From IMG/VR virus record IMGVR_UViG_3300032782_000001, positions 62,001 to 126,000 of that record: a stretch of 64,000 nt of DNA. One strand, 5' to 3'. Positions 7,192-53,089 of the stretch are shown in pieces (within the stretch, counting starts at the first letter, position 1; the number at the start of each line of letters is the position of its first letter). A program made the translations under genes and the position numbers. The notes beneath the pieces are model-generated. The model saw only the letters and a program-made list of their open reading frames with translations, searched no databases and was not told where the DNA came from.

Positions 7192-8400
7192 ATGACGTAT
7201 GAACTTGTCGAGGGTGGACGAGTCCCTATTAAGGCATGGACTCAGGGTGTGAAGTTTGAAGCAGGAGCCAAACTCCAGCTCATCAAAACGGCCATGCTTC
7301 CAATCGTGCACGGGCACATCGCGGTCATGCCCGATGTCCATTATGGCATCGGAGCGACTGTCGGAAGTGTTATTCCAACCTTGAAAGCCATTATCCCGGC
7401 CGCGGTCGGAGTAGACATTGGCTGCGGAATGATGGCCGTTCGTACGACCTTATCCGCTGATGACCTTCCAGATAAGGCAGACGAACTCTTGTTCACCCAT
7501 ATCTCGGCAGCCGTCCCGCATGGAGGAGGGAAGGATAAGGCGGTCGGTTCATGGCAGAAAGTGCCAAAATACGTCAACGAGGCGTGGGGAGGTATTGCTC
7601 CGGGGCTCGACGGCATTCTGCGTCGTCATGGGCGCTCCTTGATGCCGAACGCAGAAGGGCAGCTCGGGACGCTCGGCGGAGGTAACCACTTCGTAGAAGT
7701 TTGCCTGGACCAGAATCAACGGGTTTGGTTCATGCTCCATTCCGGTTCCCGTGGCATTGGAAATCGGATCGGAACGCATTTCATCGAGCTGGCCAAGAAA
7801 GATATGGCTCGACTTGATCGCAGACTCCCTGACAAGGACCTTGCATACCTTGAGGAAGGTACTGAACATTTCGACGATTACGTTCAGGCGGTCACGTGGG
7901 CCCAAGACTATGCCCGCATTAATCGTGAACTGATGATGCGCGCGGTGGTGGATGCAGTTCGGAAGTCTGGTCTGCCGAAGTTCACTCTCACTGATGTTGC
8001 AGTGAATTGTCATCACAATTACGTCGCCCGCGAGACCCACTTCGGCGAGGAAGTGTGGGTTACAAGGAAAGGCGCTGTCCGTGCCCAGAAGGGCGACATG
8101 GGGATCATTCCCGGATCTATGGGCGCCAAGAGTTACATCGTTCGCGGAAAAGGGAACCCTGACAGTTTCAATTCTTGCTCGCACGGAGCGGGTCGCGTAA
8201 TGGCTCGAGGTGAAGCCAAGAGAACTATTACGCTCGAACAACACCGGGCGGATACCGCGGGGGTTGCCTGCCGCAAGGACAAAGAAGTTGTCGATGAAAG
8301 CCCGTCCGCTTACAAGCCTATCGACGATGTCATGGCCGCTCAGTCCGACCTCGTTGATATCGTCTTCACCCTCAAACAAATCACGTGTGTCAAAGGCTAA
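7192..8400 (+). CDS. rtcB: RtcB RNA 2',3'-cyclic phosphate/5'-OH ligase
   Basis: MPDVHYG, VGVDIGCG, GTLGGGNHF, HSGSRG, HHNY, TRKGA, PGSMG, SCSHGAGR, AYKPI motifs. Confidence 0.97.
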   Translation: MTYELVEGGRVPIKAWTQGVKFEAGAKLQLIKTAMLPIVHGHIAVMPDVHYGIGATVGSVIPTLKAIIPAAVGVDIGCGMMAVRTTLSADDLPDKADELLFTHISAAVPHGGGKDKAVGSWQKVPKYVNEAWGGIAPGLDGILRRHGRSLMPNAEGQLGTLGGGNHFVEVCLDQNQRVWFMLHSGSRGIGNRIGTHFIELAKKDMARLDRRLPDKDLAYLEEGTEHFDDYVQAVTWAQDYARINRELMMRAVVDAVRKSGLPKFTLTDVAVNCHHNYVARETHFGEEVWVTRKGAVRAQKGDMGIIPGSMGAKSYIVRGKGNPDSFNSCSHGAGRVMARGEAKRTITLEQHRADTAGVACRKDKEVVDESPSAYKPIDDVMAAQSDLVDIVFTLKQITCVKG

Positions 8401-33238: not shown

Positions 33239-34585
33239 ATGGACGCTTCTATTCACACGGATCTCTACCAACTCACGATGGTTGCCGGATACTTCCACCG
33301 GCAAATGACTGGTTCCATGGCGACATGTGAGATGTTCGTCCGAAGGCTCCCGGAGCGTCGAAAATATCTTGTCGTAATGGGTGTCTCTAAAGTCATCGAC
33401 TATTTGGAGAAGCTCCACTTCTCTGAAGAATCTACCAGCTATCTGAAACAAATCCCTGGTATCCGAGACGCCATGACTCCGGAGTTCGAGGATTTTCTCC
33501 GGGATTTCAAATTCACTGGAGACGTAGACGCGATGCTTGATGGGACCATTGCATTCGCCAATGAACCCATCATTCGGATTCGCGCTCCTCTTGCAGAAGC
33601 GCAACTTGTCGAGACTTTCATCCTCAGCACCATCAATCATGCTACTTCTGTAGCCACCAAAGCAGCTCGAATCGTGAAAGAAGCTGGTCATGCCCGTTGC
33701 GTGGAATTTGGAACTCGGCGGACGCATCCGGAAGCGGCGGTAGACGCGGCTTATGCTGCTTGTCGAGCTGGATTCGTCGGAACGTCCAATGTCGCGGCCG
33801 GCATGAAATACGGTCTAAATATCACTGGAACGGCTGCCCATATGTGGACGATGGCGCATTCGAGCGAAGAAGACGCGTTCCGGTCATATGCGGAAGTTTT
33901 TCCGAATTCTTGCATCTTGCTCATCGACACCTACGACACCGAGAAGGGCGCAGAGCGAGCTGCGAAGATTGCACGGGAAAAATTGGCGGGCGTCCGGTTG
34001 GACTCCGGCGATCTACTCGTCTTGAGCAGGGCTGTAAGGCAGATTCTAGACTCGCACGGTCTGCAAAAGACCGAAATTGTTGCATCTGGCGACTTAAACG
34101 AATATAAGATCCGGTCGTTGCGTGAAGCAGGAGCTCCCATCGACGTCTACGGCATCGGGACTGATCTCGTCGCCTGCATAGATGCTCCGGCCCTTGGTGG
34201 AGTATATAAACTCGTCGAACTCGATGGGCGTCCTACCGCGAAATTTTCGGAATATAAATCCACTCTCCCTGGACCCCACCAAGTCATCAGGATTCAAGAG
34301 AATGGACACCTTCGCCAAGATACGATCGTCCTTGAAGACGAAACGTTGGATTTTCTCGGTCCTCCTGGCGTCTCAGCGCTGCTCGAGCCTGTCATGAGGG
34401 CTGGATGCAAGACGATGGATGGTGAAATTACGGAAATCGTACAAAATCGCGTGCGTCTCGGGCTTGACTCTCTCCCTAAAGAAATCTTGGATATCGCGTG
34501 TCCATTCACTTGTGAATTCAAAGCGTCCATTTCCACTCGTTTGCAGAGCCTTCAGGATCGACTCCGGGCATCATTTCGGAAATGA
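33239..34585 (+). CDS. pncB: nicotinate phosphoribosyltransferase
   Basis: TDLYQLTM, EFGTRR, GTSNV, GTAAH, LIDTYDT, GVRLDSGD, SGDLNE, GIGT, GVYKLVE. Confidence 0.95.
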   Translation: MDASIHTDLYQLTMVAGYFHRQMTGSMATCEMFVRRLPERRKYLVVMGVSKVIDYLEKLHFSEESTSYLKQIPGIRDAMTPEFEDFLRDFKFTGDVDAMLDGTIAFANEPIIRIRAPLAEAQLVETFILSTINHATSVATKAARIVKEAGHARCVEFGTRRTHPEAAVDAAYAACRAGFVGTSNVAAGMKYGLNITGTAAHMWTMAHSSEEDAFRSYAEVFPNSCILLIDTYDTEKGAERAAKIAREKLAGVRLDSGDLLVLSRAVRQILDSHGLQKTEIVASGDLNEYKIRSLREAGAPIDVYGIGTDLVACIDAPALGGVYKLVELDGRPTAKFSEYKSTLPGPHQVIRIQENGHLRQDTIVLEDETLDFLGPPGVSALLEPVMRAGCKTMDGEITEIVQNRVRLGLDSLPKEILDIACPFTCEFKASISTRLQSLQDRLRASFRK

Positions 34586-35796: not shown

Positions 35797-36027
35797 AGCC
35801 CAGACAAAGGTGCAGGGCTTCGATCTCTGACAATCTAACGCAGAGCGATTGAGAAGGCTCAAGGCAGCTGGAAGTTGCCAAAAGTCTTCAAACCGGGAGC
35901 TTCATGCCGCAGCCAGGTGGAAGGTGTGGAGCTCCCGGGAACCGAACTCGTGTCGGTTCAGGTCTGAAAATAACCAACGGTGGGTCCCGAAAGGGTTAGC
36001 GGGTTCGACTCCCGCTTTCAGATCCAT

Positions 36028-36329
36028 TCCAGGATAGCCAAGCGGAAAGGCAGGTGGCTGTCGATAAGGCAGCGTCTTGGGGTGACCCAAGATGGAAAAT
36101 CGGGTGAATTCAAGGAACCCTAAACCGGAAGGTATGGGAACCCTGAGCCAAGCCGGTCGAGGACAAAAGTAGACCGGAAGGTGCAGAGACTAGGAGGTGA
36201 GCAGTCCAGCGATAAACTCCACTAGCGCCCGACGTCCCTCGAGGACGATGAGATAGTCCACGCCTTGAGGAAACTCAAGGGCTTCGTGTAACCACCCTAC
36301 CGCAGGTTCGAATCCTGCTCCTGGAGCCA
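36028..36329 (+). tRNA. tRNA-Asn(GTT) interrupted by a group I intron
   Basis: exons 36028-36061 and 36289-36329 join to GGTGG-CTGTTAA-CCACC; U1-A72, G73, CCA. Confidence 0.85.
36062..36288 (+). mobile_element. group I intron (no ORF) at anticodon position 35/36
   Basis: P1 GCTGT|C pairs with GGCAGC giving the U.G splice pair; core elements GAATTCAAGGAA, AACCCTGAGCCAAG, GTGCAGAGACT, GATAGTCC; terminal G. Confidence 0.88.
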
Positions 36330-36352
36330 TTACAAGCTCGGTAATGTCCTTC

Positions 36353-36886
36353 ATGGACAAAGCCGAGAAACGTCGGAGGACCGCAATCCTCGTCACTGAT
36401 TTTCGACGTCGAATCAAGGAGAAAGCTGTCTCCTATAAAGGTGGTCAGTGCCAGAAATGCGGATACGACAAATGCGTGGCCGCTCTCAGTTTCCACCATC
36501 GTGATCCGAAAGAAAAGGAGTTCCGGCTCTCTTCAGGAAGGACTAAGAATTGGGAGAAGGTCAAGAAGGAGCTCGACAAATGCGATCTCCTTTGCGCGAA
36601 TTGTCACATGGAAGTCCATGATCAGTGGAAGCGAGAGGCTCGGGAACAGCACGAAGCGGAAATCGTTTCTCGTCGCCGCCGGCCAAAGACTTCTCGGGTT
36701 CATAAAGCTCCGGTGATTCGACCCTGGCCTGAATCCGACGAACTGCGGCATCTCGTAGAGACTACTCCGATCACTCATATTGCAAAAATGGTGGGGGTGT
36801 CCGATAAAGCAGTGCTGAAGCGATGTAAGAAGCTTGACATCGCGACTCACCCCGCAGGATTTTGGGCCCGTAAAAAGGCCGCTTGA
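36353..36886 (+). CDS. HNH endonuclease with C-terminal HTH
   Basis: CQKCGY..ALSFHHRDP..KCDLLCANCH. Confidence 0.85.
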   Translation: MDKAEKRRRTAILVTDFRRRIKEKAVSYKGGQCQKCGYDKCVAALSFHHRDPKEKEFRLSSGRTKNWEKVKKELDKCDLLCANCHMEVHDQWKREAREQHEAEIVSRRRRPKTSRVHKAPVIRPWPESDELRHLVETTPITHIAKMVGVSDKAVLKRCKKLDIATHPAGFWARKKAA

Positions 36887-36888
36887 AT

Positions 36889-36963
36889 GGTGACGAAGCT
36901 CAATGGTAGAGCAGCAAGTTGTTAACTTGTCGGAAGAAGGTTCGATTCCTTCCGTCATCGCCA
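36889..36963 (+). tRNA. tRNA-Asn(GTT)
   Basis: CAAG-TTGTTAA-CTTG, GCCA end. Confidence 0.85.
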
Positions 36964-37091
36964 TTGTTTAGGTGCCAGACCTCGAATCTGGAATACTTAA
37001 ACAGGGTAAGTGGAACCCAAACCCGTAGAAGCTCCGAAAATCAGATGCTGTTTGGTGTAAAAAGTTTTAGAGCAACTACGGGCCACTTCAC

Positions 37092-37209: not shown

Positions 37210-37334
37210 GGGGATCTTGGGTAATGGTAACCCACTCAGTGTGAAAACTGATCCGGCATCGCACCTCGCCTTTGAAAGAAGGCACCAAGCGGTTCCTACA
37301 AGCTATCCTCGTTCGAATCGAGGGATCCCCACCA
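37210..37334 (+). ncRNA. tRNA-mimic RNA 1 (conserved module inserted in the variable region)
   Basis: acceptor, D and T arms plus ACCA, with CCGGCATCGCACCTC-hairpin-GCGGTTCCTACAAGC insert. Confidence 0.8.
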
Positions 37335-37367: not shown

Positions 37368-37494
37368 GGGGAAGAAGGGCACGGCGCCCAGTCCGCTGTT
37401 AACGGAACAAACCCGGCATCGCACCTCGCTCTTGAAAGAGAGCATCAAGCGGTTCCTACAAGCTAATCAGGTTCGACTCCTGACTTCCCCGCCA
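37368..37494 (+). ncRNA. tRNA-mimic RNA 2 (GTT loop)
   Basis: same insert; GGGGAAG/CTTCCCC acceptor, GCCA. Confidence 0.8.
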
Positions 37495-37523: not shown

Positions 37524-37656
37524 GAGGGACAAGGGCACGGCGCCCACCAGCCATCCAAGCTGGCCGCAAGGCACAACTCGGCATCGCACCTCGCTTTCGC
37601 AAGGAAGCACTCAGCGGTTCCTACAAGCATACCAGGTTCGACTCCTGGGTCCCTCT
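37524..37656 (+). ncRNA. tRNA-mimic RNA 3 (TCC loop)
   Basis: same insert; GAGGGAC/GTCCCTC acceptor. Confidence 0.8.
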
Positions 37657-37691: not shown

Positions 37692-37827
37692 GAGGAAGAA
37701 GGGCATGGCGCCCACCCGGTCAATAAAACCGGTGCCTAAAAAGCACCCGGCATCGCACCTCGCTTTCGCAAGGAAGCACCAAGCGGTTCCTACAAGCAAA
37801 GTTGGTTCGAATCCAGCCTTCCTCACC
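37692..37827 (+). ncRNA. tRNA-mimic RNA 4
   Basis: same insert; GAGGAAG/CTTCCTC acceptor. Confidence 0.8.
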
Positions 37828-37989: not shown

Positions 37990-38111
37990 GGGGAAATTGG
38001 GCACGGCGCCCGCCACCTTGAACAAGTGGTTGAATCCGGCACTGCATCTCGGTCCTGTAAGGGATCAATCAGCAGTTCCCACAAGCGAGGTTCGACTCCT
38101 CTTTTCCCCCA
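37990..38111 (+). ncRNA. tRNA-mimic RNA 6 (covariant module)
   Basis: CCGGCACTGCATCTC-GGTCCT/GGGATC-GCAGTTCCCACAAGC insert. Confidence 0.75.
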
Positions 38112-39570: not shown

Positions 39571-39718
39571 GGTCAAAGAAGCGAGATTGTCGACATCTGC
39601 CGTATTTCCGCGAGGTATGGCTGCTTCTAACCTGACAATTTTCGCCCCTGGAGCCAAGATTCGCTTGGCGGGGTGCACGCAGAGACAGAGAAAGCGGGGC
39701 TGGCAACCCCACAAACCC

Positions 39719-40889
<1,171 letters not shown>

Positions 40890-40923
40890 ACTGCGAATAC
40901 TGGTCCACCTGGTAGAGTGCTCC

Positions 40924-41733
40924 ATGGGTACTCCCAGGTGGACTGTTTACTGCCATACGCACGTTGCAACTGGCCGTCGCTACATCGGGCTTACGAAGCT
41001 CACGATGATGAAGCGGTGGAACCAACACCTTCGCGATTCGCGGTTGAAGGTCGGTAAAGGATGTCGCCACCTTTGGAACGCTATCCGTGCTTACGGGAAG
41101 GATGCGTTCTCGCACGAGGTGCTCGAGATCTGCACGAATCTCGAAGTAGCAAATCTCGCGGAAAAATGTTGGATCGAGTTACACGACACTAGGAACTCCA
41201 AAAAAGGCTTCAATTTGATGCGCGGCGGTGGTCATACACCTCACCCGAACAGGAATCCTTGGGATCGTCCCGAGTATCGAGTCAGGTCCTCTGCCGCTTC
41301 CAAGAAGAAGTTCGAAAATCCGGCGTTTCGAATGAGTCAAATTCAAAGGTTGAAAGCACTGGCAGACGACCCAAAGAATCGGGCGGCTGTCAAAGCAGCT
41401 CTAAATTTACCTGAATCCAAAGCCAAACGGTCTGACATCTCTAAAGAGATTAGAAGTCGGCCGGAAGTTGTAGCGCGCATGACTGAAGTGCGCAGTTCAC
41501 CGGAGTTTAAAAGTAGGCATCGAGAAGCCTGTTCGAAGGCGATGTCGCGGCCAGAAGTCAAGGAGAAAGTGTCATTGGCTTCCAAAGCCATGTGGGCGGA
41601 TCGCAGGCCGACTCACTGCAAACGTGGCCACCCACTGGATGACGCTTATGTCGGCAAGAACGGTAATCGAACTTGCCGCCCATGCCGGAAACTCCGGGCC
41701 AATGAATCCACCACTGTAAAAGAACAGAGTTAG
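40924..41733 (+). CDS. GIY-YIG homing endonuclease with repeated DNA-binding helices
   Basis: TVYCHT...YIGLT..RW..H, E..WI...GFN; C-terminal HCKRGH..CRPC. Confidence 0.85.
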   Translation: MGTPRWTVYCHTHVATGRRYIGLTKLTMMKRWNQHLRDSRLKVGKGCRHLWNAIRAYGKDAFSHEVLEICTNLEVANLAEKCWIELHDTRNSKKGFNLMRGGGHTPHPNRNPWDRPEYRVRSSAASKKKFENPAFRMSQIQRLKALADDPKNRAAVKAALNLPESKAKRSDISKEIRSRPEVVARMTEVRSSPEFKSRHREACSKAMSRPEVKEKVSLASKAMWADRRPTHCKRGHPLDDAYVGKNGNRTCRPCRKLRANESTTVKEQS

Positions 41734-44777: not shown

Positions 44778-46046
44778 GTGGAACACTCAATTGAGACGTT
44801 AGGCAACGGCATTACTTTCGTCGTTCTTCGGAATCCGGCACTTCAAACCATGGTCGCCATGGTCGGCGTAAAAGTGGGTTCGAGATATGAAGCGAAAGAA
44901 ATGCAAGGCGCTTCTCATTTCATTGAGCACATGATGTTCAAAGGGACGAAAAAGTATCCTTCGAGCAAAGCGCTTTCTGAAATCATCGATGCTCGGGGTG
45001 GTGAGCATAATGCCTATACAGACAAGGAACTGACGAATTTTTACGTCAGGATGGCAAAATCATGCGGAGATGTTGCAGTCGATCTCGTTCATGACATGAT
45101 TGCTAACTCTCTCTTCCGGACTTCGGACGTAGAAAAAGAGCGTCCGGTCATCCAAGAAGAGATCTCCGGATATGACAACAACCCGGACCATAATGCCTGG
45201 GAGCTTTCTGAACGGGTCGCTTACAAGGGTTCAGGACTCGAACACCCGATCGCGGGTTCTGTGGAAAGCGTTACTTTCCCCGCCAATTCCCTTCGCAAAT
45301 TTTTTCGAAAGCATTACGTGCCGTCTCGAATGGCCGTTGTCCTTTCAGGAGCTGTCGATGATAAGCTAGTGGCTACTGCCCAGGAGAAATTTTCTAGTAT
45401 TCCCATGGAAGAAGTCGATACTGGCTACGATATGGCCAGTATGCCGAAAGGTGGATTGGACTTCAAAGTAGGTAATACTGACAAAATCCATTTTGTAATC
45501 CGGCTGCCTGGAACGGCATACGGGGCTCCGTATGCTAGAATGACAGATATCCTGTCTGTTGTTTTGGGTGGATACATGTCAGCCCGTCTTTTCCAGTCTC
45601 TTCGAGACAAACACGGGCTTTGCTATGGAGTATTCGCATTCCCGCACCATTATTCTGACACGGGGTCACTGCTCATTGGAACTTCTCTCGACAGGAAAAA
45701 TTTCCCGAAAGCGCTTGAAGTTCTCGTGAAGGAACTTTGGAAAATCTCCAAAAAAGGCGTCACAGAGAAGGAACTTCAAACGGTCAAAGATCACATCCGC
45801 GGCGTTAAATCAATGGACATGGATAGGCCAATGGGTCTTGCCGCTGATGCCATTTTGCAACTCTTCATGAGCCGCACGTACGAAACCCCTGAAGAGGATA
45901 TGGCGAAGTACCAAGAGGTTACGCTGAATGATGTAAATGTTCAGGCGTCAGGAGTAAAGCCGACTGCGCATGGCATGCACATCGCCGTGGTCGGGCCGAA
46001 AGGAGCAGAAAAAGAAGTTCGTAAGGCATACGAAGCAGCGTTGTAA
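44778..46046 (+). CDS. M16 (pitrilysin-family) zinc peptidase
   Basis: GSRYE, HFIEHMMFKGT, NAYTDKE, LGGYMSARLFQ.LRDKHGLCY. Confidence 0.93.
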   Translation: MEHSIETLGNGITFVVLRNPALQTMVAMVGVKVGSRYEAKEMQGASHFIEHMMFKGTKKYPSSKALSEIIDARGGEHNAYTDKELTNFYVRMAKSCGDVAVDLVHDMIANSLFRTSDVEKERPVIQEEISGYDNNPDHNAWELSERVAYKGSGLEHPIAGSVESVTFPANSLRKFFRKHYVPSRMAVVLSGAVDDKLVATAQEKFSSIPMEEVDTGYDMASMPKGGLDFKVGNTDKIHFVIRLPGTAYGAPYARMTDILSVVLGGYMSARLFQSLRDKHGLCYGVFAFPHHYSDTGSLLIGTSLDRKNFPKALEVLVKELWKISKKGVTEKELQTVKDHIRGVKSMDMDRPMGLAADAILQLFMSRTYETPEEDMAKYQEVTLNDVNVQASGVKPTAHGMHIAVVGPKGAEKEVRKAYEAAL

Positions 46047-48222: not shown

Positions 48223-48299
48223 GGGGCAGTGAACGTAATCGGTGAACGTCCTCGCCTCATAAGCGAGTTCATGTGGATTCGAATCCCACCTGCCCTACC
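48223..48299 (+). tRNA. tRNA-Ile2/Met (CAT)
   Basis: CTCGC-CTCATAA-GCGAG. Confidence 0.75.
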
Positions 48300-48329: not shown

Positions 48330-48698
48330 ATGATGCCGAATAAGGACCCTATTGTCCGGAAAGAACACCATCGAAACTATATGAAGAATGTCTGGCTGAA
48401 AAAGCCAGAGAATAGAGAAGCTCACATTTGTCGAGTCCGTGCCGTAAGCAAACGTCGTGATGCAGCGGCGAAGCAATTACTTGCAGAATTCCGATCAGGA
48501 GGTTGCAAGCAATGTGGAGAACTGGACGAATCATGTCTAGTAGCTCACCACATAGACCCTTCGGAGAAGGAATTCAATGTGAGCCATGCGATGAGGCGAT
48601 CACTGAAAGCAATCGCACGTGAATTGGCGAAATGCATATGCCTTTGCATGAACTGCCATGCTAAACTCCATGCTGGCCGAATTACCATCCCAGAATGA
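48330..48698 (+). CDS. HNH endonuclease
   Basis: CKQCG..LVAHHIDP..KCICLCMNCH. Confidence 0.85.
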   Translation: MMPNKDPIVRKEHHRNYMKNVWLKKPENREAHICRVRAVSKRRDAAAKQLLAEFRSGGCKQCGELDESCLVAHHIDPSEKEFNVSHAMRRSLKAIARELAKCICLCMNCHAKLHAGRITIPE

Positions 48699-48702
48699 AA
48701 AT

Positions 48703-48777
48703 GCCGGCTTCGCTCTCAGGGAGAGCACCTTCCTCACGCGGAGGACTAGGAGGGTTCGAGTCCCTCAGCCGGTACCA
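48703..48777 (+). tRNA. tRNA-Val(CAC)
   Basis: cloverleaf, CCA. Confidence 0.8.
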
Positions 48778-51334: not shown

Positions 51335-51962
51335 ATGAAGGTCCGTGGAACTCAATATGTCTTCGGTTCAGCTGCCGATCGCCGGTGGCAGGTCGTTTCC
51401 GAGCTTCGTTCCTGCCTTCATTGAAGCTGGATTCCAGGAACTCATCGTTCCTGCGCTCGCTTCTCAAGACGTCTTCGTAAAGAAAGCCGGTCCTGAAGTC
51501 CTCGGACAGATGTACACGTTCCCCGACAAAGGCGGGCGTCCGCTCTGTCTTGTACCGGAAATTACCGGTGTAGTCCAGGACCTTTGGAATGAAGGCTTCT
51601 TCAGCCAGCTTCCGAAGCCGATTCGTCTCTTCTACGTCAGCCGATGTTGGCGCTACGAACGTCCACAAGCCGGAAGGTATCGAGAATTCACCCAAGTAGG
51701 TGTGGAGATTCTCGGCGCACGGGACGACCAACGAACAGGATGCATCGACCTTCTCCGTAAATGCTTGGATGCCGTAGGGCTTCAAGGCTACGTCATCAAC
51801 GACGCAGTGAAACGTGGACTCGCTTACTACTTGGAAGACGGGTTTGAAGTGGAATTCGCGGCACTCGGAGCGCAGAAACAAATTGCGGGTGGTGGGAAGT
51901 ACGCTGAAGGGATCGGATGGGCCATCGGTCTGGAAAGGCTTTTGTTGGCCTTGAGCACATGA
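51335..51962 (+). CDS. histidyl-tRNA synthetase-like, catalytic domain only; apparent +1 indel near 51410
   Basis: AAGGAG SD + MKVRGT in one frame; QMYTFPDKGGR, PEIT, WRYERPQAGRYREFTQ, RGLAYY, AGGGKY, GWAIGLERL in the next frame; no anticodon-binding domain. Confidence 0.85.
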
Positions 51963-53002: not shown

Positions 53003-53075
53003 GCCGCTGTCGTTCAGTCTGGTAGGACGTCTCCCTTGTAAGGAGAATACGCGGGTTCAAATCCTGTCGGCGGCT
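53003..53075 (+). tRNA. tRNA-Thr(TGT)
   Basis: cloverleaf. Confidence 0.85.
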
Positions 53076-53089
53076 CAAATTAAGTATAT

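What the first reader, a model, noticed from the sequence alone, without database searches (positions are those of the whole stretch)
36028..36329. Self-splicing group I intron inside the anticodon (35/36) of a phage tRNA-Asn
The 227-nt intron has a clear P1 with the U.G pair right after G34-U35, recognisable core elements and a terminal G. Splicing restores a GTT anticodon in a body with Asn identity (U1-A72, G73). Classical bacterial tRNA group I introns sit in Leu, fMet, Ile and Arg tRNAs. I recall Asn/Asp 35/36 introns being noted only in a restricted bacterial group. Phage group I introns are typically in protein genes. A free-standing HNH gene and a second, intronless tRNA-Asn follow directly, suggesting collaborative homing.
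Basis: partly seen in the sequence, partly recalled or inferred. Interest (0 to 1): 0.65.

Follow-up and report, generated by a model that had tools for sequence, protein, structure and literature searches.

The report
Group I intron in phage tRNA-Asn
A 436-kb wetland phage carries a tRNA-Asn gene split in its anticodon by a 227-nt group I intron of a class already known in bacteria, and the HNH endonuclease gene beside it belongs to the family that sits inside this same intron class in other bacteria, so the pair looks like an intron and its homing enzyme kept as separate genes.

Summary
Window 36028-36329 is a split tRNA gene. Exons 36028-36061 and 36289-36329 flank a 227-nt group I intron (36062-36288; Rfam RF00028, 76.6 bits, E 1e-17).

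ARAGORN's default register gives Thr(UGU). The P1 U·G wobble, the U1-A72/G73 frame and 19 homologous introns all favour CUGU|UAA, which is Asn(GUU) split at 35/36.

The class is not rare. Williams (2020 preprint) lists "Asn.4Ug" in bacteria, and it was the third commonest class in my capped bacterial sample (16 of 121). What seems unreported is this class in phage tRNA arrays: here and in three other viral contigs.

The downstream ORF (36344-36886) is an HNH endonuclease. Homologues are encoded inside Asn.4Ug introns of four MAGs or genomes labelled CPR or DPANN, and they abut the interrupted tRNA-Asn in two other phage contigs. This gives comparative support for collaborative (trans) homing.

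Splicing and cleavage are untested because no RNA data exist. Verdict: a new member of a known kind, of moderate interest.

The parts
36028..36061 (+). 5' exon of tRNA-Asn(GUU): acceptor 5' strand UCCAGGA, D arm, anticodon-stem 5' strand GGUGG, then C32 U33 G34 U35
   Evidence: ARAGORN -i split tRNA 36028-36329. The precursor fold closes the acceptor, D and anticodon stems. The exon frame matches 19 other Asn.4Ug genes.
36062..36288 (+). 227-nt ORF-less group I intron (IC3-like tRNA type, class Asn.4Ug). Helices: P1 36058-36062/36068-36072 (U36061·G36069); P2 36073-36081/36086-36094; P3 36100-36106/36226-36232; P4 36109-36115/36141-36147; P5 36119-36120/36136-36137; P6 36153-36157/36177-36181; P7 36192-36196/36254-36258; extra hairpin 36197-36225; P8 36233-36237/36243-36247; P9 36263-36269/36274-36280; terminal G at 36288
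   Evidence: RF00028 76.6 bits, E 1e-17. Consensus fold of 9 homologues: 30 of 52 pairs with compensatory changes, 95.5% of cells paired against 32-44% when partners are slid, P7 invariant. nhmmer profile built without ours: E 4e-36.
36289..36329 (+). 3' exon: U36 A37 A38, anticodon-stem 3' strand CCACC, variable loop, T arm (GCAGG UUCGAAU CCUGC), acceptor 3' strand UCCUGGA, G73, CCA
36344..36886 (+). Free-standing HNH endonuclease gene (180 aa from ATG 36344; alternative ATG at 36353): N-terminal CxxC...HH...N...CxxCH core, C-terminal helix-turn-helix
   Evidence: PHROG phrog_2255/3106/35854 'HNH endonuclease', E 2.5e-29 to 7e-18. Pfam HNH is sub-threshold at 15.3 bits over the full model, with a weak HTH at aa 141-164. 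43-57% identical to ORFs inside or beside other Asn.4Ug introns.
36889..36963 (+). Second, uninterrupted tRNA-Asn(GUU). G1-C72, anticodon arm GCAAG UUGUUAA CUUGU. Starts 2 nt after the HNH stop codon
   Evidence: ARAGORN; Rfam tRNA 65.7 bits.

Best explanation
What is shown in silico: window 36028-36329 is a tRNA-Asn(GUU) gene in the roughly 45-gene tRNA array of a 436-kb phage. A compact, ORF-less group I intron interrupts it between anticodon positions 35 and 36. The intron is of the bacterial tRNA (IC3-like) type and belongs to the class Williams named Asn.4Ug.

Inferred mechanism of splicing: the anticodon stem holds the exons together. The guide sequence GGCAG pairs with exon CUGU plus the first intron base to form P1, with U35·G at the cleavage site. 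Exogenous guanosine bound in P7 attacks after U35. The terminal G36288 then takes the G site, and the exons are ligated to give the loop CUGUUAA.

Inferred role of the neighbour: the adjacent HNH gene is the homing endonuclease of this intron lineage, kept outside the intron. It would cut intron-less tRNA-Asn genes at or near the insertion site in co-infecting relatives, and possibly in hosts. Repair would then copy the intron, the HNH gene and flanking DNA. This is collaborative (trans) homing. The phage's own copies would be protected, one by the intron and the other by sequence divergence.

My separate estimates: group I intron at 35/36 of tRNA-Asn, about 0.93; still splicing-competent, about 0.8; HNH functionally coupled to the intron site, about 0.55.
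For: - Intron identity: RF00028 full-length hit above gathering. An independent family profile hits only here in the genome (E 4e-36).
- Structure: P1-P9 are recovered, with 30 of 52 pairs showing compensatory changes and P7 invariant.
- Register: U36061·G36069 is the only wobble in P1, while U36059 pairs with A. In L030, L061, L097, L126, L132, L185 and L207 only CUGU|UAA satisfies both the U(-1) and terminal-G rules. All members have UCC...GGA-G acceptor ends. The phage's own Thr tRNAs have G1-C72.
- Class already described: the supplement of bioRxiv 10.1101/2020.01.27.920355 holds 'Pam37.Asn.4Ug' with the same P3-P4 string.
- HNH inside the same intron class: L123, L150, L230 and L165 carry a homologue in the P1 loop, with the ORF end running through the guide sequence into P2.
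- HNH beside the same intron class in phages: the ORF ends 14 nt before the interrupted tRNA in L030 and starts 57 nt after it in L061.
- Copy number: the phage has only 3 copies of this HNH family in 436 kb, one of them 14 nt from the sole intron.
- Clustering: HNH hits lie near intron cores across 14 loci (Fisher p 5e-5).
- Polymorphism: a related population (run X2) has an identical intron piece but diverges immediately after the tRNA's CCA and does not cover the HNH.
Against: - No RNA evidence exists. Only two DNA metagenome runs hold the phage.
- P10 is at best 1-2 bp (read from the sequence), and P4 has one A·C mismatch in this copy.
- The genome has a second tRNA-Asn(GUU), so a dead interrupted copy could be tolerated.
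- No intron-less allele of this exact gene was found, so the junction is not confirmed at DNA level.
- A paralogue of the HNH sits between intron-free tRNAs at 48468-48671. Relatives in cultured phages also lie in tRNA clusters without group I introns. The family may therefore simply favour tRNA arrays.
- L097 has the intron but no HNH within 10 kb. X2 appears to keep the intron without this HNH.
- Pfam's HNH model is below threshold.
Confidence: 0.75

Rival explanations
1. The intron sits 2 nt upstream, after U33, and splicing yields CU|UGUAA, a tRNA-Thr(UGU), as ARAGORN calls it.
For: ARAGORN -i reports Thr(tgt) i(33,227). That register also has a U before the 5' site and a G (36286) at the intron end.
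Against: U36059 is Watson-Crick paired to A36071 in P1, whereas U36061 forms the U·G wobble. Seven homologues lack a terminal G in that register. The acceptor end U1-A72/G73 is the bacterial Asn type, and the phage's Thr tRNAs start GCCG. The genome already has a Thr(UGU) gene at 53003-53076.
Confidence: 0.03
2. The interrupted gene is a decaying relic. The intron no longer splices, and the phage relies on the neighbouring intact tRNA-Asn.
For: A redundant tRNA-Asn(GUU) lies 560 nt downstream. The peripheral region between P7 and P3' differs from that of its relatives, and P4 has an A·C mismatch. There is no expression data.
Against: All 59 positions invariant across the 13 aligned family members (this copy included) are intact here, including P7, J8/7, the guide sequence and the terminal G. 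All core helices pair. A 199-nt stretch of the intron is identical in a second sample from another study. The tRNA exons fold into a normal cloverleaf.
Confidence: 0.15
3. The HNH is an independent free-standing homing endonuclease of tRNA arrays, in the style of T4 SegB. It spreads by intron-less homing, and its position next to the intron is coincidental.
For: A paralogue lies between tRNA-Met and tRNA-Val with no intron nearby. Relatives in Sinorhizobium phage phiM7 and in Lak phages lie among tRNA genes with no RF00028 hit nearby. SegB is a precedent (PMC2330249, listed). X2 seems to have the intron without the HNH.
Against: The same HNH family is embedded inside the same intron class at the same tRNA site in four independent MAGs or genomes. 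It also abuts that site in two other phage contigs. The proximity statistics argue against chance.
Confidence: 0.3

Closest known systems
Asn.4Ug class of bacterial tRNA group I introns (Williams 2020, bioRxiv 10.1101/2020.01.27.920355; seed 'Pam37.Asn.4Ug')
   Same: Same host gene, the same insertion point (CUGU/UAA), U(-1) and a terminal G, and the same P3-P4 core string AAAUCGGGUGAAUUCAAGGAA. The most similar members in my alignment are an Elusimicrobia copy (71%) and Eubacteriales-labelled copies (66-70%).
   Different: That survey covered bacterial and archaeal assemblies only. This copy is in a phage tRNA array, has its own version of the hairpin between P7 and P3', and has its endonuclease outside the intron.
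Classical IC3 tRNA introns: Azoarcus tRNA-Ile(CAU), Anabaena/Nostoc tRNA-Leu(UAA), Agrobacterium tRNA-Arg(CCU), cyanobacterial tRNA-fMet
   Same: Compact introns of about 200-250 nt in the anticodon loop. They share the P6-P7 signature GAGCCAAG...AAGGUGYAGAGACUA, which also retrieved Leu, Arg and Met/Ile2 introns. The exons are held together by the anticodon stem.
   Different: The isoacceptor and loop position differ (35/36 here, against 34/35 or 36/37). Subgroup IC3 was not tested with a subgroup-specific model.
Collaborative (trans) homing: cyanophage S-PM2 psbA intron with the free-standing F-CphI, and the Aeh1/T4-type mobE cases (Zeng, Bonocora and Shub 2009; reviewed in PMC3984707)
   Same: [quoted passage not shown]
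   Different: The host gene is a tRNA, not a protein-coding gene. Cleavage at the insertion site is not shown. Here the same endonuclease family is also found already embedded in the same intron class, which is the end state that the model predicts.
Synechocystis tRNA-fMet intron encoding I-SspI (Bonocora and Shub 2001, cited in PMC3984707)
   Same: [quoted passage not shown]
   Different: From my own knowledge, that enzyme is not an HNH and is intron-encoded. Here the enzyme is an HNH, and in the phage it is extra-intronic.
Lak megaphage tRNA introns (Devoto et al., bioRxiv 10.1101/356790)
   Same: Introns in tRNA genes of very large phages. Lak genomes also encode relatives of this HNH, about 36% identical.
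   Different: Those introns were unclassified ('enigmatic'). The Lak locus I looked at has no RF00028 hit.

Membership tests
Group I intron (Rfam RF00028) | Covariance-model match above the curated gathering score | tested here: met
   76.6 bits against 50, model positions 1-253 of 253, E 1e-17.
Group I intron (Rfam RF00028) | P1 helix with a U·G wobble at the 5' splice site | tested here: met
   U36061·G36069. The wobble is kept in 8 of 9 and 3 of 3 aligned homologues.
Group I intron (Rfam RF00028) | Terminal guanosine at the 3' splice site | tested here: met
   G36288 precedes UAACC. This column is invariant across 13 homologues.
Group I intron (Rfam RF00028) | Conserved core: P3/P7 pseudoknot, P4-P6 and P8, supported by covariation | tested here: met
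   52 pairs, 95.5% of cells paired, 30 pairs with compensatory changes, slid controls 32-44%. P7 never varies, so it is uninformative about covariation.
Group I intron (Rfam RF00028) | Guanosine-dependent self-splicing | not testable with these tools
   No RNA run holds the phage.
Bacterial tRNA (IC3-type) introns | Inserted in the anticodon loop of a tRNA gene whose exons fold into a cloverleaf | tested here: met
   ARAGORN -i call. The precursor fold shows acceptor, D, anticodon and T stems.
Bacterial tRNA (IC3-type) introns | Assignment to subgroup IC3 by a subgroup-specific model | not tested
   Only the shared P6-P7 signature with classical Leu, Arg and Ile2 introns was seen. Williams states that the classical four are IC3.
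Asn.4Ug class | Insertion between positions 35 and 36 of tRNA-Asn(GUU), CUGU/UAA | tested here: met
   The alternative Thr register was rejected on P1 and on comparative grounds.
Asn.4Ug class | Sequence homology of the intron to other members | tested here: met
   nhmmer profile of 12 members without ours: E 4e-36 over profile positions 2-240. Identity to other members is 56-71%.
HNH homing endonuclease | HNH (beta-beta-alpha-metal) motif | tested here: inconclusive
   Strong PHROG HNH families (E 2.5e-29). The motif CxxC...FHHRD...CANCHMEVH is conserved with homologues. Pfam PF01844 reaches only 15.3 bits against a cut-off of 21.4, and there is no PDB sequence match.
HNH homing endonuclease | Site-specific cleavage of the intron-less or endonuclease-less allele | not testable with these tools
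   Needs an enzyme assay.
Collaborative (trans) homing pair | An ORF-less intron with a free-standing endonuclease gene adjacent in the same genome | tested here: met
   No ORF of 50 aa or more lies wholly within the intron on its own strand. The HNH starts 14 nt after the tRNA.
Collaborative (trans) homing pair | The endonuclease target coincides with the intron insertion site | not testable with these tools
   Indirect only: the same HNH family is intron-encoded at this site in L123, L150, L230 and L165.
Collaborative (trans) homing pair | Presence/absence polymorphism among close relatives | tested here: inconclusive
   Run X2 has an identical intron piece but diverges right after the CCA and gives no cover over 36408-36943. 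Depth is only 2-5x and the contigs are short. No intron-less allele was found.

The most novel reading that the evidence does not exclude
The phage's ORF-less Asn intron and its trans-encoded HNH form an active shuttle. It would move the intron between phage tRNA arrays and bacterial tRNA-Asn genes. Together with the CPR copies, where the same HNH is embedded in the P1 loop, this one family would show both stages of the proposed route from collaborative homing to a composite mobile intron. A bolder version is that the HNH also cuts the host's intron-less tRNA-Asn genes during infection, while the phage's own copies are immune (one intron-protected, one diverged).
Probability: 0.2. Interest if true: 0.7.

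Novelty: new member of a known kind. Interest (0 to 1): 0.5.

Why it matters
The 2014 review of bacterial group I introns states that every phage intron then known lay in a protein-coding gene, despite the many phage tRNA genes (PMC3984707). I found no later report of a bona fide group I intron in a phage tRNA. This locus, plus at least 32 split tRNAs among 118 sampled viral contigs, shows that phage tRNA arrays do host such introns, and standard tRNA finders miss or mislabel them.

The HNH result is the more useful part. One endonuclease family occurs both beside and inside one intron class. That makes a natural test bed for how composite mobile introns arise.

For annotation, the lesson is that ARAGORN labels this class Thr(UGU), and Rfam's model misses the compact viral members.

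Tried and rejected
- RNA evidence for splicing: the look-up of sequencing runs returned only two DNA wetland runs, so no junction reads were available.
- Intron-less allele: the 30-nt 5'-exon word occurs only in the phage's own record, in both viral contigs and metagenome contigs.
Exons were handled separately, and ARAGORN's intron mode worked on unspliced DNA. The only joining was reading the 7-nt loop across the junction inside scripts to label the register.
- Cultured phages: blastn of 35900-37000 against 50,697 phage records hit only tRNA-Asn, with no intron relative.
- Rfam on the other viral Asn introns: L097 is sub-threshold (36.4 bits), and L030 and L061 are not found. They were accepted as group I only after a covarying consensus fold.
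- HNH checks: Pfam's HNH model is sub-threshold, and the PDB sequence search gave nothing relevant. The large protein searches were not used because the PHROG scans settled the family.
- Idea that the GIY-YIG ORF or another intron splits the EF-Tu gene: rejected. Domain 3 continues in another frame across an FFF codon run, which is a frameshift.
- Idea that the five odd tRNA-like units hold a known ribozyme or intron: no Rfam match, and no copies elsewhere.
- Operators' limits: read laying was given 4,001 letters.

Full report
**Setting.** The window is bases 62001-126000 of a 436,316-bp IMG/VR virus record with direct terminal repeats, rated complete. It comes from a wetland metagenome. The window encodes a collagen-like tail fibre and an RtcB-type ligase. 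The genome has 50 tRNA genes by ARAGORN, about 45 of them in one array at window 35.5-53.2 kb. Its G+C content is 0.50.

**The observation.** Rfam's group I intron model matches 36050-36280 end to end at 76.6 bits (gathering score 50; E 1e-17). It is the only such hit in the genome. The minimum-energy fold of the 302-nt precursor closes the acceptor stem, D stem, anticodon stem (GGUGG/CCACC) and T arm around an intron with P1, P2, P3, P6, P8 and P9. Its energy lies 3.7 sd below that of shuffled sequences.

**Which anticodon?** ARAGORN places the intron 2 nt upstream, which gives CU|UGUAA, Thr(UGU). Because the intron ends ...GUG, both registers have a U before the 5' site and a G at the intron end. 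Three lines of evidence decide for CUGU|UAA, Asn(GUU).
- In P1, U36061 lies opposite G36069, which is the only wobble. U36059 pairs with A36071.
- Among the first 17 homologous split genes examined, seven allow only the Asn register, and all share the guide sequence GCAG pairing with exon CUG-U. A wider search later raised the family to 19 members besides ours.
- The acceptor end is U1-A72, C2-G71 with G73, as in every other family member and, from established knowledge, in E. coli tRNA-Asn. The phage's own Thr tRNAs begin GCCG with U73.

**Is it a real, intact ribozyme?** I aligned nine homologues of the same subgroup. The consensus fold gives P1, P2, P3, P4, P5, P6, a small hairpin after P7, P8 and P9. 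With the P3/P7 pseudoknot added, the counts are as follows.
- 95.5% of cells form standard pairs, against 32-44% when the partners are slid by 1-3 columns.
- 30 of the 52 pairs change on both sides while staying paired.
- 0 of 500 shuffles reach these values.
- P7 (GACUA/UAGUC), which holds the guanosine site, is invariant.

A profile HMM built from the 12 other family members, without ours, hits the phage genome once, at window 36055-36292 (E 4e-36). Weak points in this copy are an A·C mismatch in P4, a divergent hairpin between P7 and P3', and a P10 of at most 1-2 bp. A weak P10 is usual for tRNA introns, where the anticodon stem aligns the exons (Zaug et al. 1993, cited in PMC3984707).

**What is known.** The 2014 review states that all phage introns then known were in protein-coding genes, despite the many phage tRNA genes. 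Williams (2020 preprint) raised the bacterial tRNA intron types from 4 to 21. Its seed alignment contains 'Pam37.Asn.4Ug', which has the same P3-P4 string as ours. The Lak megaphage preprint reported unclassified tRNA introns and said that none had been reported in phages before. I found no report of a group I intron in a phage tRNA. The library searched is not exhaustive.

**How common is the class?** A P6-P7 signature pattern retrieved at least 118 viral and at least 120 bacterial loci. Both scans were capped, and the pattern biases the sample. I applied ARAGORN plus the U(-1) and terminal-G rule with wide flanks.
- Of 121 bacterial cores, 40 are Leu(UAA) 34/35, 19 are Met/Ile2(CAU) 36/37 and 16 are Asn(GUU) 35/36.
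- The Asn set comes from WWE3, Staskawiczbacteria, Saccharibacteria, Nomurabacteria, Parcubacteria/Paceibacterota, Microcoleus/Tychonema, Elusimicrobia, Eubacteriales-labelled MAGs and two 'Pacearchaeota' bins.
- Of 118 viral cores, 32 are in split tRNAs and 86 are not. Among those resolved, 19 are Leu, 5 are Met/Ile2, 3 are Asn and 1 is Lys.
- The three other viral Asn cases are L030 (361-kb contig), L097 (298-kb contig, inside a dense tRNA array, with a second intron core at L063) and L061.
- These three are compact (199-211 nt), and Rfam scores them poorly or not at all. They still share a covarying group I fold.

Ours is closer to the Elusimicrobia and Eubacteriales-labelled copies (66-71%) than to the other phage copies (59-64%). 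This suggests separate acquisitions.

**The HNH gene.** The ORF at 36344-36886 matches PHROG HNH families strongly, but Pfam's HNH model only weakly. It has a C-terminal helix-turn-helix. The genome holds three copies of this family: here, at window 48468-48671 between two intron-free tRNAs, and at genome position 327 kb. I ran tblastn against all fetched loci.
- In L123 (a complete WWE3 genome), L150, L230 and L165, the Asn 35/36 intron is 423-569 nt long. It encodes a homologue (43-57% identity) on the same strand.
- In L123, L150 and L230 the ORF sits in the P1 loop, and its last codons run through the guide sequence GCAGC into P2.
- Two copies are decayed. L150 has an internal stop, and L165 is a 70-aa stub.
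- In phage L030 a homologous ORF ends 14 nt before the interrupted tRNA-Asn. In L061 one starts 57 nt after it. In ours it starts 14 nt after.
- Homologues also lie inside or beside Leu and Met/Ile2 introns.
- Across 14 loci the hits lie closer to the intron core than chance placement predicts (Fisher p 5e-5).

This matches the collaborative-homing model in the review, in which a free-standing endonuclease and an ORF-less intron share one target site and a later recombination embeds the gene. Here both states occur within one family.

**Population evidence.** A second wetland run from another study holds a contig identical to 36042-36240, and another covering 36231-36327. Its contigs run into unrelated sequence right after the CCA at 36329. 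They give no cover over 36408-36943 and resume identically at 36958. This suggests that the HNH plus second-tRNA-Asn cassette is variable while the intron is kept. Depth is low and the tool warns that holes prove nothing, so I treat this as a hint.

**Limits.** Splicing, the junction and the HNH's target are all inferred.

Noticed in passing
window 37210-37334, 37368-37494, 37524-37656, 37692-37825 and about 37990-38110: Five tandem tRNA-like units. Each has acceptor, D, anticodon-like and T arms plus a conserved extra arm of about 50 nt in the variable-region position: an outer stem, an internal loop, a 6-bp stem and a GNRA-like tetraloop. Both stems show compensatory changes between copies. 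Unit 2 has the loop CUGUUAA (a third GUU gene), and several loops are non-canonical. ARAGORN and Rfam do not call them. The module occurs 5 times in this genome and nowhere else in IMG/VR with that pattern.
   Followed up: partly
window 35963-36026: A tRNA-like mini-element, with an acceptor-like stem UCUGAAA/UUUCAGA, a T arm and a CCCGAAAGGG hairpin in place of an anticodon arm. It ends about 1 nt before the interrupted tRNA-Asn. The 230 nt upstream are unusually structured.
   Followed up: no
window 39587-40890 and 40837-41733: An EF-Tu gene whose domain 3 continues in another frame across an FFF codon run near 40700. This is either a frameshift or an assembly error. A GIY-YIG (SegE-like) endonuclease ORF follows.
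   Followed up: partly
window 48468-48671: A second paralogue of the HNH (37% identity) between tRNA-Met (48223-48299) and tRNA-Val (48703-48777), with no intron nearby.
   Followed up: no
window 44778-46046, 51345-51962, 33239-34585 and 7192-8400: Protein genes embedded in or near the tRNA array: an M16 peptidase, a 205-aa histidyl-tRNA synthetase fragment, a nicotinate phosphoribosyltransferase and an RtcB RNA ligase.
   Followed up: no
G000:C1:139122-139296 and 141433-141807 (outside the window): Two tRNAs with anticodon UCA, which ARAGORN labels SeC, and a tmRNA gene with tag ANDNGALRIAA in the phage genome.
   Followed up: no
L002-L119 (viral contigs): 86 of 118 viral contigs with the IC3-type core signature are not in a tRNA gene that ARAGORN can call. 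They are presumably introns in protein-coding genes. L048 carries a Lys(CUU) 35/36 intron.
   Followed up: partly
L241 (Sinorhizobium phage phiM7, NC_041929.1, 92505-93049): A relative of the HNH (gp151) lies between tRNA-Met and a 123-nt gene annotated tRNA-Thr, on the opposite strand. There is no group I hit, and the over-long tRNA is unexplained.
   Followed up: partly
L132 and L165 (bins labelled Candidatus Pacearchaeota): Asn 35/36 group I introns in bins labelled as DPANN archaea. Williams suspected mis-binning for a similar case.
   Followed up: no
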